64,000 nucleotides of DNA. Source: Adineta vaga. Its lineage: Eukaryota > Animalia > Rotifera. The stretch is from assembly GCA_021613535.1 (NCBI GenBank), contig CP075494.1, forward strand, positions 13,206,001-13,270,000, in the 5' to 3' direction. Shown in pieces: positions 47,044-51,966 of the stretch (the first letter of the stretch is position 1; every line of letters begins with the position of its first letter). Under the pieces are notes generated by a model, which worked only from the letters and a program-made list of their open reading frames with translations, did not search any database and was not told the DNA's origin. Position numbers and translations under genes: made by a program.

Positions 47044-48254
47044 CTAGTAAAATTGTCGATTTGGTGGATAAGAATGTGGTCGATATTGCTGTTGAGGAGG
47101 AACGAACTGTGGTTGGGGAGGCGGTGGTGGTGGAGGTGGATGCCCATATCCTTGTGGACGAAATCCCATATCAAATATTGGTGGTGGTGCCATTCCTGGT
47201 ACATTCATTGGTGGAAAAGCCATTAGTGGTGGAGGACCTTGTGGTCCTGGTTGTTGTTGCTGTTGCTGCTGTTGAGGATCCACAACAAGACCAGGAAATG
47301 AATTCGTTGGTGGATGTGGCGACGGTAGTAATTGAAGAGGAGATTCTAGACGTGTTTGTAGCGGTTGAGGTTGTTCATGACGTCGCTTGACATGTGCTTG
47401 AAGATCACGTTGTGATGTATATCCTCGTAGACAAGCATCTTGTGAATGAGGATGTGAACCATGATGACAAAGAATAAGATTTTTTGCTTCGATTTTCTCA
47501 ACATCTGTAATCGCATCATTACATCTTTTCAAATCAAACAAAAATAAGTAATAAATCAGAAAAGATATGAAATAATCGGTTTACTTTGGACAATTACGAC
47601 GACCATTTTTACATTCATTGGCACATTGTAAACAAAAAGCTGCATGTTTACATGGCAACTATAAATGAGAATAAAAGAAAAATTCCTATCAGTTTTATAA
47701 ATATATGATCATACCAATCTTCCAACAAGTAATACTGGATATCGACAATTAAGACAACAGAATGCTTTTGTTTCTTTAATTCTTCTTCCGACATGATTCA
47801 CCTTGAAAAATGAAAACGACAGAAATTCAAATTTATGTTTCAGTAAAAGAACTATATGGAAATTACTCGAAAATCCCATCGAACACTGTTCGGTTGTTTT
47901 ACCGATGAACTTCCTCGAGAACTTCGATCACTTGCACTGGCATCATCATCATCGTCATCATCATCATCCATACTTCTATTACCATCGTCATGATCATGAT
48001 CTAGAATGAAAAAAAAAACATTTAGAATTTTCCAATCATTTAAAGTAATAATATAGACCACTGCTTGATGATGATGATTCACGATCTCCACTTCTTGAAC
48101 GTGAATTTCTTCGAGTTTTTTGTCGATTATTATCACGAGAATTCCGTTCATTGGATGGTGATCTTCTCCGAGTTTTTTGTGCTTGTTGTTGTTGTTGTTG
48201 CTGTTGCTGTTGCTGCTGCTGTGGTACGAAAGTATTCGTTTCAATAGGTCCCAT
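47044..48254 (-). CDS. CBLL1: E3 ubiquitin ligase Hakai (multi-exon)
   Basis: VRWDFR-VNHVGRR, RING CLNC...GRL-LPCKHAAFCLQC...CPKC, HYB zinc finger CLRGYTSQRDLQAHVKRRH, Pro-rich tail. Confidence 0.9.
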
Positions 48255-48466
48255 GGTATTTCAATTATAAAAATGGTATGACACAAGAAATTATACTAGA
48301 CTAGACTAGACTAGATTCTATTCTATCTTTCTTCTCATTGGTTACTTTTTCAGCCATAGAAAAATTTACTGACCTCTGTTTGAACTCTGTTCTATTCGTT
48401 CGATTAAACTCTTGTTCACACAAATACATTAACGCTCATTAAAAATTACTTGTCTTCATAATCAAC

Positions 48467-49938
48467 ATGCTCAGTCAACAAGCCTATATGAGTCCTGGTG
48501 ATGATGAAATGTTATTCGATGATACAACACCGATTACCTTTGGAGAAAATAAAAAATCCAATTGTAAAACAAATAGAACTGATCTACCAATTCAATATCC
48601 GAATGGTATATCTTCAATTCTTGCCTTTCTTCTTATTCGAATTTGATATTTTTATTAAGATGATAAACTATCAACATTATTTAATACGACAGGTCGAGAA
48701 AAGAACTCAACAGGACCTTTGAAACAATGGCTTTTCGAACATCAACATCATCCATGTTTGTAACTTTTCTTAATCAAATAGATTACGTAGATTGATATTT
48801 CTAGATCCTAATGAAGCCGATAAACAAGAATTGATGGAAAAGACGAAGATGTCTTTATCACAAATTACCGTTTGGTTTACAAATGCTCGTGTAAAAATGA
48901 GAAAAGAAAATAAATTACCATTGAATTTATATGCAAAGAAGAAGAAGAAAAAACAACAACAACAACAAGATGATTCGTTTCATCTTGATGATACTTTATC
49001 ACCACCATTTTCAGCACAAAATTTATCTTTTAATGGTAATGATTACATACTTTCTTAACATAAAAGTTATTTTTTCTTCAATAGAATTATCAACATCATT
49101 CGATAATGAATACACAAGCGATGGTAATCTTGATGATACATATACTTCCAATATTGTTATGGTTTGTCCATCGGTAGAGAAACGAATTGTTTTGGCATAT
49201 TCATGTTTAAATATCGAACAACTTGTATGTAAAATTTTGCATTTCATTCGATTAAAATATGTTCTCTTTTTAGACTGAAGTACATCGTTTCGCTTCATTA
49301 TTTCCCAATCAAATTATCTTATCAAATTGTGTCGATGATCGTACTACACATTTAATTGTTGGCAATGAAGAAAAACCATTGTTATGTCCATTAACAATCA
49401 AAGTATTTCAAGCTATTGCTCGTCATTTATTTGTTTTAACATATCGATGGATCTGCGAATGTTGTAAACAAAATCAAATTATTGATGAAACATCATTTGA
49501 AATACGAGGCGATATTCCATTCGGTGAATATCACGATGGAATGCGTCATAGTCGATTATCTAAACATATGAATCTATTTGAAAATTGTCAATTTTTTATT
49601 TCATGTAACGATTGTCAAGAAAAAATGGTAAGTAAATTGAATTCGTATTCCATTAATCTCTATTTACTTTTCTTTAGGGTAAAACTGAACTTGCTTCTTT
49701 GATTACGTTATGTCGTGGTACACTTCTTTATACTCATCCAATAGCAACATCAAATGATTCTTCCATTTTAACCATTGTACTTTGTGATAAATTACTTCCA
49801 TTCAATTCTCCAGCTCAACAGCAATTATTTGAAACATCACGTTCGAATGGTGTTCATTTTCTTAGTCCTGAATGGGTATTGGAATCAATTGTTCAATTTT
49901 CGTTACAACCATTCGATGACTATGAAGAAAAATTTTAA
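48467..49938 (+). CDS. TALE-class (Iroquois/Mohawk-like) homeodomain fused to BRCA1-type tandem BRCT; exons 48467-48605, 48660-48755, 48805-49035, 49085-49224, 49274-49627, 49678-49938
   Basis: Six phase-compatible exons give one ORF containing STGPLKQWLFEHQHHPYPNEADKQELMEKTKMSLSQITVWFTNARVKMRKENK, then LAYSCL...TTHLIV...CPLTIKVFQAIA...YRWI...FEIRGD...G.YHDG, and a second BRCT LITLCRG...SPEWVLESI. Confidence 0.85.
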
Positions 49939-50184
49939 GATTAACATATCAGATATCTTGTTATGTCAGATATTATCTGAATGCAACAGTGAGAACATTG
50001 TCAGATATACATATACATATACATCTCTTCCTTGTGTATTTTGTTTTATATACAGAAAGAGAATTTAAAAACGAAACTGGAAAAACCTGTCTTATGTGTT
50101 TATAAATTAAAATAAAAAGAAATTAGAGATTTTTTTTTGCAAATAAACTAAAACACTATTGTACGTAAAAGTTGTTTTTAGATT

Positions 50185-51966
50185 ATGAAACGTCGAAGAG
50201 AAAGTGAAGACGATAGGAACAAGTAAGAATTTGTTGATGAAATGTTGATAAGATTCTCTTCATTTTTTTTCGAAATAGAACGCAATTGGAAGATTTATCG
50301 AATGAATTACTCTATGAAATCTTCGATTATGGTGATTATTGTTCTATGCATGAAATTTTTGCTAATTTAAATTTACGTTTTCAATCTCTCATTACTCAAA
50401 CACCATTACCATTGAATGTCGATTTTCCATTAATATCAAAATCTATCTACGAACAACGTTGTGTACAGCTGATTCAACCGAATATTCAACGAATTATCTC
50501 TTTAAATATAACGAAACATTTTCTTGATTTCTTTGCAATTGATTTATTTTCTTCTCTTCAATCTTTAACTGTTCAACATATTTCGTCGGAAAAAATCAAT
50601 TCACTTCTACTACAATTAAGATCTTTAACAAACTTTTCTAGTCTCTCAATTCAATCAGAAGATTATTTTCAAAACGAAAATATCTTATATAGTTCTATTT
50701 TTCATTTAACAAAATTGAAATTTTGTAAATTAAAATATCAACGTGGTGGAGACCGTGTTCCATTACCACTTGCTACTAGTCCATGTCGAATCTTAGAACA
50801 TTTAATTATCGATTCTCATTGTCGTCTTGATCAACTCATATCGATACTTTCTTATCTACCTCAATTAAAACATTTATCATGCAGTGAACTTTTCAATGCT
50901 GACTATGACGAAATAAAACTATCATTGAAATTAACAACCATTCACCTTAAATTAGTGTTTGTGTCATTTACTACTTTGAAATCGTTATTGTCCAATGTCA
51001 GTTCCAGATTGAAAATTTTAAGAATAGAAACAACCGATAATGGTTTTCTTTATGCAGAGCAATGGCAACAATTGATTGAACAGTATATGCCATTGTTACA
51101 GACTTTTGATTTTCGATATTCAACTTCAGCTGATGTTGATAATCAAGAGAGATTAATACAGGGATTTTCTTCGAATTTTTGGAATGAACGAAACTGGTTT
51201 TTCGATCATTATTATCATTATCTAGATGACGATTTATTTTACTTTCATTTCTTTTCCATTGTTCCATACAAGTAAGTTCAGCCTATAGGCTATTTTCTTT
51301 ACATATTTCATTTTTTCAAGATATGATCAGTTTGAATTGCATGTATTTACCAAGTATCATGAACCGAAATCGTATGAAAAGAATCACATTAATTATGCTC
51401 GTCATGTAAAGATTGAAGATTGTTTAAAAAGAAAAAATTACACTATTCAATTTCCTTGTGTCAAAGAACTTACTCTCCAAAGTATTGATGTTAAAAAGAA
51501 CTCTTGGCTTACTCGTACTATGAAATCTATTATTCCTTTACTACAAATTACAAAATTAAATCTGTATGATCAAAGAATAACAAACAAGAAACTAACTACA
51601 TTTTTACATGCTTTACCAAATTTAGAATCTCTAACGTTAACAAATTTATCACCATCAACAGCGAAGCGACCCAATATGTCTAGAATAACAAGAGTGTCAC
51701 TGTATGAGAAATGTCATATCAAACATCTGGAATTTCTTATCGATGTTTTTCCTCGTGTAGAACATCTGAAAATAAGCATCGATGAAAATCATCTTGAAGA
51801 AATTCTTCAATTTCTAGTATTGAAAGCAAAATATCTGTTTTTATTGATCATTCATTTTGCTCATTATGAGATGATTGAAGTAGTAAAAGCAATCATCCAA
51901 AAGAATCAATTGGTTAATAATTATTCAGTTGAACGTATTGATGGAGAACTATACTTATGGTGTTAA
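50185..51966 (+). CDS. F-box / LRR-like protein of a type expanded in bdelloid rotifers (3 exons)
   Basis: LEDLSNELLYEIFDY F-box-like start, leucine-rich repeats, AEQWQQLIEQYMPLLQTFDF and FSSNFWNERNWFF motifs. Confidence 0.75.

What the first reader, a model, noticed from the sequence alone, without database searches (positions are those of the whole stretch)
48467..49938. TALE homeodomain fused to a BRCA1-type tandem BRCT
Seen: six exons with compatible phases join an Iroquois/Mohawk-like homeodomain (HPYP TALE loop, KMSLSQITVWFTNAR..RKENK) to a BRCT pair. By eye this pair tracks BRCA1 specifically: TTHLIV ~ TTHVVM, CPLTIKVFQAIA ~ CERTLKYFLGIA, FEIRGDIPFGEYHDG ~ FEVRGDVVNGRNHQG, EWVLESI ~ EWVLDSV. 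The pSer-pocket equivalents of BRCA1 S1655 (AYSCL) and K1702 (TIK) are kept; G1656 appears as C. There is no RING. Known: BRCA1 BRCTs bind pSxxF damage-signalling peptides, and I know no described homeodomain-BRCT protein. Inference: a lineage-specific DNA-binding reader of damage phosphorylation, of interest in desiccation- and radiation-tolerant bdelloids. It could be the remodelled BRCA1 of this lineage.
Basis: partly seen in the sequence, partly recalled or inferred. Interest (0 to 1): 0.88.

Follow-up and report, generated by a model that had tools for sequence, protein, structure and literature searches.

The report
Rotifer homeodomain fused to BRCA1-type BRCTs
This is a real, expressed and conserved bdelloid-rotifer gene that joins a DNA-binding homeodomain to the phosphoprotein-binding end of the breast-cancer protein BRCA1. 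It is one branch of a large rotifer-only family of such BRCA1-derived modules, not the lineage's single BRCA1, and its function is untested.

Summary
One spliced 1452-nt contig from a public run covers window 48389-50091 with five GT..AG introns removed, so the homeobox and the BRCT pair are in one mRNA. It confirms the 49035->49085 junction and moves the start of exon 2 to 48660. The CDS is 406 codons.

In the ohnologue on contig C2, homeodomain helix 3 and the first BRCT strand lie in one open exon. Adineta, Rotaria and Didymodactylos carry proteins with the same architecture.

The BRCT pair is BRCA1-type by sequence (PDB E 3e-21, against 1e-3 for MCPH1, PTIP and BARD1), by fold (TM 0.82-0.87) and by an intron at the site of human c.4986|4987. 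The homeodomain is TALE class and closest to the genome's own Iroquois genes.

The reading 'remodelled BRCA1' is not supported. The genome (Adineta vaga) has at least 16 BRCA1-type BRCT loci. All bdelloid copies form one clade (100/98), with this gene nested inside. None has a RING. All replace R1699 but keep the S/T/K phosphate pocket.

I found no paper that discusses the fusion. A published supplement lists such genes as 'BRCA1' and shows them not induced by radiation or desiccation.

This scan had already noted the ohnologue and a second homeodomain-BRCT subfamily on other DNA.

The parts
48389..48466 (+). 5' UTR (at least)
   Evidence: First base of the spliced contig of run X15; the ATG is at 48467.
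48467..48605 (+). Exon 1, coding: disordered acidic N-terminus; ends in phase 1
   Evidence: Model pLDDT is below 50 for the orthologue's residues 1-61.
48660..48755 (+). Exon 2: conserved KLSTLF motif, homeodomain N-terminal arm and helix 1 up to H-P-(Y); ends in phase 1
   Evidence: cDNA joint 48605->48660; translation; 30-31/31 identical in A-type orthologues.
48683..48914 (+). TALE homeodomain (residues about 55-115 of the 406-aa product), interrupted by intron 2 inside the P-Y-P loop codon
   Evidence: Pfam Homeobox_KN. Best PDB matches are PKNOX1, MEIS, TGIF and PBX. Closest in-genome homeodomains are the canonical Iroquois genes. Three helices are modelled at pLDDT 83-94.
48805..49035 (+). 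Exon 3: homeodomain helices 2-3 (WFTNAR..RKENK), Lys run (NLS-like), acidic Ser-rich linker with SPPF; ends in phase 1
49085..49224 (+). Exon 4: rest of the disordered linker and BRCT1 strand 1 (AYSCL). The S1655 equivalent is codon 49201-49203, followed by Cys in place of G1656
49225..49273 (+). Intron 4, phase 0, at the position of human BRCA1 c.4986|c.4987 (F1662|M1663)
   Evidence: Alignment to human BRCA1. The human intron is attested by variants c.4986+6T>C and c.4987-3C>G (PMC9341024, PMC3249558). The same exon start at HMM position 31 occurs in nearly all paralogues.
49274..49627 (+). Exon 5: rest of BRCT1, inter-repeat linker, start of BRCT2. L (in place of R1699) 49391-49393, T1700 equivalent 49394-49396, K1702 equivalent 49400-49402, M1775 equivalent 49625-49627
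49678..49938 (+). Exon 6: BRCT2 (EWVLESI) and the TAA stop
49939..50091 (+). 3' UTR (at least)
   Evidence: End of the spliced contig.

Best explanation
A bdelloid-specific nuclear adaptor or transcription factor. An Iroquois-derived TALE homeodomain binds specific DNA sites. A disordered linker of about 70 residues with a lysine run follows. At the C-terminus, a BRCA1-derived tandem BRCT binds a phosphoserine- or phosphothreonine-bearing partner. The protein would thereby tie a phosphorylation signal to particular loci, or act as an activation module, as the BRCA1 C-terminus does when fused to a DNA-binding domain. It is not an E3 ligase and not the canonical recombination BRCA1. It is one member of a bdelloid radiation of RING-less BRCA1-type BRCT proteins. 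Shown here: the single transcript, the domain identities, the conservation, the intact phosphate pocket and the family structure. Inferred: DNA binding, phosphopeptide binding, the partner and any link to DNA damage.
For: One mRNA: a spliced contig covers the whole gene, and the ohnologue L002 has homeodomain helix 3 and BRCT strand 1 in one ORF, 1884-2171 minus. The same architecture is annotated in A. steineri, A. ricciae, A. vaga (I4U23_007089), three Rotaria species and Didymodactylos. The homeodomain is 93-99% identical across genera, and the whole protein is 84-90% identical between Adineta and Rotaria, which indicates strong constraint. W48, F49, N51 and R53 of helix 3 and an Arg in the N-terminal arm are kept. 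The BRCT pair matches BRCA1 at 3e-21 by sequence. The top 30 Foldseek hits are all BRCA1 BRCT, TM 0.82-0.87. The model has pLDDT above 90 over the pair, with a disordered linker. S1655 (S/T), T1700, K1702, F1704, M1775 and L1839 equivalents are kept in 13/13 type-1 orthologues. The gene is expressed: runs from several studies hold about 0.67-0.70 of the sampled words, close to the 0.72 expected for the spliced form.
Against: R1699, which is invariant in 25/25 non-bdelloid BRCA1-like rows and which, from my memory of the human BRCA1-peptide structures, contacts the peptide backbone at +3, is Leu. G1656 is Cys and E1698 is Pro. Peptide binding may therefore be altered or lost. There is no binding, localisation or phenotype data. 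The published expression table shows no induction of the homeodomain-bearing 'BRCA1' entries after X-rays, Fe ions or desiccation, so a damage-response role has no support from transcript levels, although a phospho-reader need not be induced. The spliced evidence is one contig of one run whose library type is not on record.
Confidence: 0.55

Rival explanations
1. A developmental Iroquois-like transcription factor in which the BRCT pair is a phosphorylation-independent protein-interaction or activation domain, with no connection to DNA-damage signalling.
For: R1699L, G1656C and E1698P change the peptide groove. Expression of the homeodomain-bearing 'BRCA1' entries is flat after irradiation and desiccation. 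The closest homeodomains in the genome are Iroquois patterning genes.
Against: The phosphate-contacting S/T, T and K are kept in 13/13 orthologues and in nearly all of the bdelloid family. That pattern is hard to explain if phosphate binding were irrelevant.
Confidence: 0.22
2. One reading: this is the lineage's BRCA1, remodelled. It lost the RING, gained a homeodomain, and still acts in double-strand-break repair.
For: No RING lies within 20 kb of any of the 16 BRCA1-type BRCT loci. No bdelloid protein among the best 150 hits has a RING. The BARD1-type RING family gives only a borderline TRAF-like hit. PMC6264785 states that BRCA2 and Rad52 are absent in bdelloids. KEGG-based annotation calls such genes BRCA1. 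The intron position is shared with human BRCA1.
Against: It is one of at least 16 paralogous loci and is nested inside the bdelloid clade rather than at its base, so it is at most one co-orthologue among many. It has no RING and no coiled coil. It is not induced by damage. The six-frame, exon-by-exon RING search can miss a RING that is split by introns.
Confidence: 0.1
3. An artefact: two neighbouring genes (a homeobox gene and a BRCT gene) joined by eye, or a read-through transcript.
For: Only one spliced contig could be laid; three other runs laid nothing.
Against: The ohnologue has no intron at this point, so both domains share one exon. Independent gene predictions in seven or more bdelloid assemblies give the same fused protein. 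All junction phases are compatible and there is no stop. Only one copy of the locus exists in the assembly, so a retrocopy does not explain the intron-less contig.
Confidence: 0.02

Closest known systems
BRCA1 C-terminal tandem BRCT (human, PDB 1JNX, 1T2V, 9QPX and others)
   Same: The sequence is specifically closest to BRCA1 (3e-21 against 1e-3 for other BRCT pairs). The fold matches at TM 0.82-0.87. S1655, T1700, K1702, F1704, M1775, W1837 and L1839 equivalents are kept. A phase-0 intron lies at the F1662|M1663 position.
   Different: No RING, no long central region, no coiled coil. The protein is 406 aa, with a homeodomain where BRCA1 has its N-terminal 1600 residues. R1699 is L, G1656 is C and E1698 is P. 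It is one of at least 16 paralogues rather than a single-copy gene.
Iroquois (IRX) and other TALE-class homeodomain proteins
   Same: It has the three-residue P-Y-P loop, helix 3 with WF.NAR, and the KENK tail. The best in-genome matches are the canonical A. vaga IRX genes, with score 113-116 against 87 for MEIS/PKNOX and 69 for TGIF.
   Different: Position 50 is Thr (Ala in IRX) and position 54 is Val (Arg in IRX). The start of helix 1 (WLFEH.HHPYP) looks more like MEIS/PKNOX, which are also the best PDB hits; no IRX chain appeared among the PDB matches. There is no room for IRX-type C-terminal motifs, because the C-terminus is the BRCT pair.
Second bdelloid homeodomain-BRCT subfamily (C5:11.059 Mb and C2:7.215 Mb in this genome; Didymodactylos P0008/P0166, 828-952 aa)
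   Same: TALE homeodomain upstream of a BRCA1-type BRCT pair on one strand. It shares Cys at the G1656 position, P-L at E1698-R1699, and M1775.
   Different: It is much longer, with N-terminal Cys3His repeats that earlier notes call Capicua-like. The homeodomain is only about 40% identical. The BRCT tree does not join the two subfamilies, but a single origin is not rejected (AU p 0.07).
GAL4-DBD-BRCA1 C-terminus fusions (experimental) and yeast Rap1 (BRCT plus Myb/homeodomain-like DNA-binding domains)
   Same: A BRCT module on the same chain as a sequence-specific DNA-binding domain. From my own knowledge, the BRCA1 C-terminus activates transcription when tethered to DNA. A solved BRCA1 BRCT complex with the Pol II pSer5 CTD is the top fold hit.
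   Different: The first is artificial. Rap1 has a single N-terminal BRCT that is not BRCA1-type. Neither was compared by sequence here.

Membership tests
BRCA1 orthologue | C-terminal tandem BRCT closest to BRCA1 rather than to BARD1, MDC1, MCPH1 or PTIP | tested here: met
   PDB phmmer gives 3e-21 for BRCA1 against 8e-4 to 3e-3 for the others. The Foldseek top 30 are all BRCA1. After the bdelloid paralogues, the best hits among 1.84 billion proteins are RING-bearing BRCA1s.
BRCA1 orthologue | N-terminal C3HC4 RING that pairs with BARD1 | tested here: not met
   The 406-aa product has no RING. No RING was found within 20 kb of any BRCA1-type BRCT locus with a single BRCA1 RING or a 25-row RING profile. 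The BARD1-type RING family PF14835 gives only a borderline RING-TRAF hit.
BRCA1 orthologue | Single-copy, one-to-one relation with BRCA1 of other animals | tested here: not met
   There are 16 loci in this genome. All bdelloid copies form one clade at 100/98, with this gene nested inside.
BRCA1 orthologue | Shared intron position within the BRCT region | tested here: met
   Intron 4 is phase 0 and lies at the equivalent of F1662|M1663, which is human c.4986|4987. Intron 5 (M1775|P1776 equivalent) does not coincide with the human boundary that I recall (c.5332/5333); that second point is from memory only.
BRCA1 orthologue | Coiled coil (PALB2 binding) and long central region | tested here: not met
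   Between the homeodomain and the BRCTs there are only about 70 residues. They are predicted disordered and contain no helix.
Phosphopeptide-binding tandem BRCT (BRCA1 pSxxF type) | Phosphate pocket: S/T at 1655, backbone NH at 1656, T1700, K1702 | tested here: inconclusive
   S, T and K are kept in 13/13 orthologues, but residue 1656 is Cys instead of Gly in all of them. The pocket geometry was not inspected.
Phosphopeptide-binding tandem BRCT (BRCA1 pSxxF type) | +3 Phe site: R1699, F1704, M1775, L1839 | tested here: not met
   F1704, M1775 and L1839 are kept, but R1699 is Leu in 13/13 orthologues and L/F/I in every bdelloid paralogue. It is Arg in 25/25 other BRCA1-like rows.
Phosphopeptide-binding tandem BRCT (BRCA1 pSxxF type) | Measured phosphorylation-dependent peptide binding | not testable with these tools
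   This needs peptide arrays, ITC or pull-downs.
TALE-class homeodomain | Three extra residues (P-Y-P) between helices 1 and 2; helix 3 with W48, F49, N51 and R53 | tested here: met
   Pfam Homeobox_KN scores 8.6e-18 on the orthologue. TALE proteins are the best PDB hits. Three helices are modelled.
Iroquois (IRX) family | Homeodomain closest to IRX; Ala50; IRO box downstream | tested here: inconclusive
   The homeodomain is closest to the genome's own IRX genes over helices 2-3 and the KENK tail. But position 50 is Thr and helix 1 resembles MEIS/PKNOX. The IRO box was not searched for, and no IRX reference from other animals was available.

The most novel reading that the evidence does not exclude
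Bdelloid rotifers have lost the RING-bearing BRCA1/BARD1 ligase. They kept the BRCA1 phospho-reader and multiplied it to at least 16 loci per haploid genome, attaching it to DNA-binding modules: the TALE homeodomain in two ohnologue pairs, C2H2 fingers, and Cys3His repeats. This would create a family of transcription factors or chromatin tethers that read kinase signalling, possibly damage kinases, directly at specific loci. The conserved S-x-x-F motif beside the homeodomain could be a self-ligand that gates DNA binding.
Probability: 0.15. Interest if true: 0.85.

Novelty: new variant of a known kind. Interest (0 to 1): 0.6.

Why it matters
BRCA1's BRCT pair is one of the best-studied phosphoprotein readers, and in known animals it sits behind a RING ligase. 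Here the same module, still recognisable down to an intron position, is fused to a sequence-specific DNA-binding domain. It is conserved at 84-99% identity across bdelloid genera, inside a rotifer-only radiation of RING-less copies.

In animals famous for surviving massive DNA breakage, which are reported to lack BRCA2 and Rad52, this raises two testable questions: what replaced the BRCA1-BARD1 axis, and whether phosphorylation signalling is wired directly to promoters.

It also corrects an annotation in use. Genes listed as 'BRCA1' in A. vaga DNA-repair tables include homeodomain fusions without a RING.

Tried and rejected
1. Joined protein. Exons were searched one by one by reference. The A. 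steineri orthologue P0001 (87% identical) stood in for whole-protein work, including the model and the PDB and fold searches. In script the exon translations were aligned one by one and never joined.

2. Word-based search with the homeodomain region alone. It found only bdelloid proteins (15 candidates), so it says nothing about the TALE class or about fusions elsewhere.

3. ESM Atlas features for the homeodomain. Scores were at most 0.78, which is uninformative.

4. Outgroups for the tree. The tree is therefore unrooted. Separation from BARD1 rests.

5. Mapping the paper's FUN_ gene ids to this locus by number. These are AV19 ids and cannot be mapped, so I cannot say which of the homeodomain-bearing 'BRCA1' rows is this gene.

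6. The top RING hits (L011/L013, L012, L049) were inspected. They are RING-TRAF-like or RING plus a YEATS-like tail, not BRCA1 or BARD1.

7. The origin of the small environmental RING-BRCT proteins (P0031 and kin) could not be identified.

8. Read laying. Three of the four runs laid nothing, and the tool warns that this can be false.

9. Single origin of the two homeodomain-BRCT subfamilies: neither shown nor rejected (AU p 0.0735).

10. Supplements of PMC12220480 and PMC6264785 hold nothing on this gene.

11. No complex prediction was run, because no specific partner is claimed.

Full report
**What is there**

Window 48467-49938 (+) holds a six-exon gene. Each exon was translated by reference, and the phases fit: 1, 1, 1, 0, 0. 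Pfam places Homeobox_KN on exon 3 (1.5e-9), BRCT on exon 5 (4.8e-9) and BRCT_2 on exon 6 (4.5e-7).

**One transcript**

Public runs of the same organism hold 0.67-0.70 of the sampled 31-mers of 48300-50100. The spliced form found would give about 0.72, and two likely DNA runs hold 0.85-0.88.

One 1452-nt contig of run X15, laid on the stretch, covers 48389-50091 without a mismatch. It skips exactly five GT..AG segments of 49-54 nt: 48606-48659, 48756-48804, 49036-49084, 49225-49273 and 49628-49677.

The CDS is 1221 nt, or 406 residues.

The run's library type is not on record, and three other runs laid nothing, which the tool warns can be false. Two points answer these weaknesses:
- The assembly has only one copy of the locus, so a retrocopy does not explain the intron-less contig.
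- The ohnologue on C2 (L002, 68% identical in exon 5) has no intron at this point. Homeodomain helix 3 and the first BRCT strand lie in one ORF, 1884-2171 minus.

**Whose genome**

The assembly is 100.8 Mb in six contigs. The protein 'I4U23_007089 [Adineta vaga]' (P0158) lies on a contig of 16,274,841 bp, which is exactly the length of C2. The window is therefore from Adineta vaga, C5:13.25 Mb.

**Conservation**

A search of 1.84 billion representatives with exon 5 gave a 403-aa A. steineri protein (P0001) as best hit. It carries Homeobox_KN at 70-108 and two BRCTs.

Proteins with the same architecture exist in A. ricciae, Rotaria sordida, Rotaria sp. Silwood1 and Silwood2, and Didymodactylos carnosus. 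They fall into two ohnologous types. Summed over the exons, the window product is 84-90% identical to the A-type proteins of Adineta and Rotaria and 53% identical to its own ohnologue. The homeodomain is 93-99% identical across genera.

The pairs C5 13.255/13.334 Mb and C2 4.195/4.113 Mb are sisters in the tree and collinear in inverted order, as expected of ohnologous blocks.

**The BRCT pair is BRCA1-type**

- Sequence: the orthologue's residues 160-403 hit human and rat BRCA1 BRCT chains at 3e-21 to 2e-18. MCPH1, PTIP and BARD1 score 8e-4 to 1e-2 (exon 5 alone).
- Fold: an AlphaFold model built on a 54-row alignment has pLDDT above 90 across the pair. Its 30 best Foldseek matches in the PDB are all BRCA1 BRCT (TM 0.82-0.87), ahead of MCPH1, BARD1, PTIP and MDC1.
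- Gene structure: intron 4 is phase 0 and falls between the equivalents of F1662 and M1663 (alignment). That is the human c.4986|c.4987 boundary, attested by the intronic variants c.4986+6T>C and c.4987-3C>G. Nearly all A. vaga paralogues begin an exon at the same profile position.

**The homeodomain**

It is TALE class: it has the P-Y-P loop, and PKNOX1, MEIS, TGIF and PBX are the best solved matches. Within the genome, its nearest relatives outside the fusion genes are the three canonical Iroquois genes. Scores are 113-116 for these, against 87 for MEIS/PKNOX and 69 for TGIF.

Positions 50 (Thr) and 54 (Val) are unusual. W48, F49, N51 and R53 are kept.

The model shows three helices at pLDDT 83-94. 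They are flanked by a disordered N-terminus and a disordered linker of about 70 residues with a Lys run.

**Not 'the' BRCA1**

Exon 5 finds 16 loci in this genome. A second ohnologue pair (C5:11.059 Mb and C2:7.215 Mb) also has a TALE homeobox about 1 kb upstream of the BRCTs on the same strand. It matches the 828-952-aa Didymodactylos proteins P0008 and P0166. Other members carry a C2H2 finger, a Cys cluster or no recognised N-terminal domain.

In a careful IQ-TREE of 64 BRCT pairs:
- All 36 bdelloid rows form one clade (100/98) on a long stem.
- The type-1 homeodomain fusions form a clade (100/99) nested inside it.
- The RING-bearing BRCA1s lie on the other side.

The tree has no BARD1 or MDC1 outgroup and is unrooted. 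A single origin of the two fusion subfamilies is neither shown nor rejected (AU p 0.0735).

**No RING found**

- None of the bdelloid proteins retrieved has a RING pattern.
- A BRCA1 RING, alone or as a 25-row profile, finds only generic RINGs. None is within 20 kb of a BRCA1-type BRCT locus.
- The best hits are RING-TRAF-like proteins or RING plus a YEATS-like tail.
- The BARD1-type RING family gives one borderline RING-TRAF hit.

The search works exon by exon in six frames, so a RING split by introns could be missed. Loss of BRCA1/BARD1 is suggested, not shown. PMC6264785 states that BRCA2 and Rad52 are absent in bdelloids.

**The peptide groove**

Equivalents of S1655 (S or T), T1700, K1702, F1704, M1775, W1837 and L1839 are kept in all 13 type-1 proteins. 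G1656 is Cys and E1698 is Pro.

R1699 is Arg in 25/25 non-bdelloid BRCA1-like rows. It is Leu here, and L, F or I in every bdelloid paralogue.

In passing:
- An S-x-x-F motif (STLF or SSLF) directly before the homeodomain arm is kept in 13/13 orthologues.
- An SPPF in the A-type linker is kept in Adineta but is SPPH in Rotaria.
- About one such motif is expected by chance in a region of this size, so these are leads only.

**Literature and expression**

No paper in the library combines BRCT with a TALE homeodomain or homeobox, or with rotifer homeodomains. Surveys of A. vaga homeoboxes do not mention the fusion.

Table S8 of PMC10809525 lists five A. vaga genes as K10605 'BRCA1'. I read four of the five rows:

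| Gene id | Pfam labels | Mean expression |
|---|---|---|
| FUN_020908 | PF00533 + PF05920 + PF16589 | 245 |
| FUN_007433 | PF05920 | 316 |
| FUN_025314 | BRCT only | lower |
| FUN_008232 | BRCT only | lower |

For the two homeobox-bearing rows, all log2 fold changes are below 0.4 and none is significant after desiccation, X-rays or Fe ions. The ids belong to the AV19 annotation and could not be tied to this locus. The fusion is thus hidden in a published table under the name BRCA1, but it is not discussed.

**Earlier notes of this scan**

Earlier notes describe the C2 ohnologue (s1-484482) and the two type-2 genes (s1-482531, s1-494350) in the same terms. I reached those loci independently and agree with the notes.

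**Verdict**

The most likely mechanism is a DNA-tethered phosphoprotein reader or activator (0.55). Whether it has anything to do with DNA damage is open.

**Limits**

The spliced protein itself was never submitted to a tool; the A. steineri orthologue served as proxy.

Noticed in passing
G000 C5:11058537-11059626 (-) and C2:7214551-7215848 (+); loci L021, L022, L035, L036: A second ohnologue pair of homeodomain-BRCT genes. They are longer, with repeated N-terminal Cys3His modules (G-D-I-I..W-R..C..C..C..H) upstream of a TALE homeobox and a BRCA1-type BRCT pair. Didymodactylos P0008 and P0166 are the annotated counterparts.
   Followed up: partly
16 loci listed (C1 2.80 Mb, C2 4.11-4.69, 7.2 and 13.8 Mb, C4 11.6-12.0 Mb, C5 11.06 and 13.25-13.34 Mb, C6 12.23-12.28 Mb): A bdelloid-only radiation of RING-less BRCA1-type BRCT pairs. 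All have L/F/I at the R1699 position, and nearly all share the exon start at the human c.4986|4987 position.
   Followed up: partly
G000 C6:1828749-1828988 and C6:1837246-1837485 (L012, L014, L055, L056): A tandem pair of 173-aa genes (RING plus a YEATS-like C-terminus). They are the genome's best match to a BRCA1 RING profile (1e-13) but have no BRCT nearby. This is probably a generic RING resemblance.
   Followed up: partly
orthologue residues about 48-54 and 141-144; window 48668-48682 and about 49000-49011: The S-x-x-F motif STLF next to the homeodomain arm is kept in 13/13 orthologues. SPPF in the linker is kept in Adineta only. Either could be a self-ligand of the BRCT pair; this is untested.
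   Followed up: partly
P0031, P0199, P0200, P0047, P0079 (metagenome contigs L053, L054): Small, intron-less RING plus tandem-BRCT proteins of 448-461 aa from unidentified environmental eukaryotes. They form their own long branch outside both the bdelloid clade and the main BRCA1 group, and they have Val at the R1699 position.
   Followed up: partly
P0118 (Amphiura filiformis) and P0133: A SET domain fused to a BRCA1-like BRCT pair, another unusual partner for this module outside rotifers.
   Followed up: no
L003 / C6:12.279 Mb; P0007, P0171: An Alba/Rpp25-like gene lies directly downstream of a BRCT paralogue. In Didymodactylos it is annotated as one BRCT-Alba protein, which may be a merged gene model.
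   Followed up: no
window 47044-47700 (-), 47852-48286 (-), 50183-51275 (+): The neighbours are a Hakai-like RING gene with a Pro/Gln-rich tail, a His/Gln/Arg-Ser-rich ORF that shares a divergent promoter region of about 135 bp with the fusion gene, and an F-box-like gene about 90 bp beyond the 3' end of the transcript.
   Followed up: no
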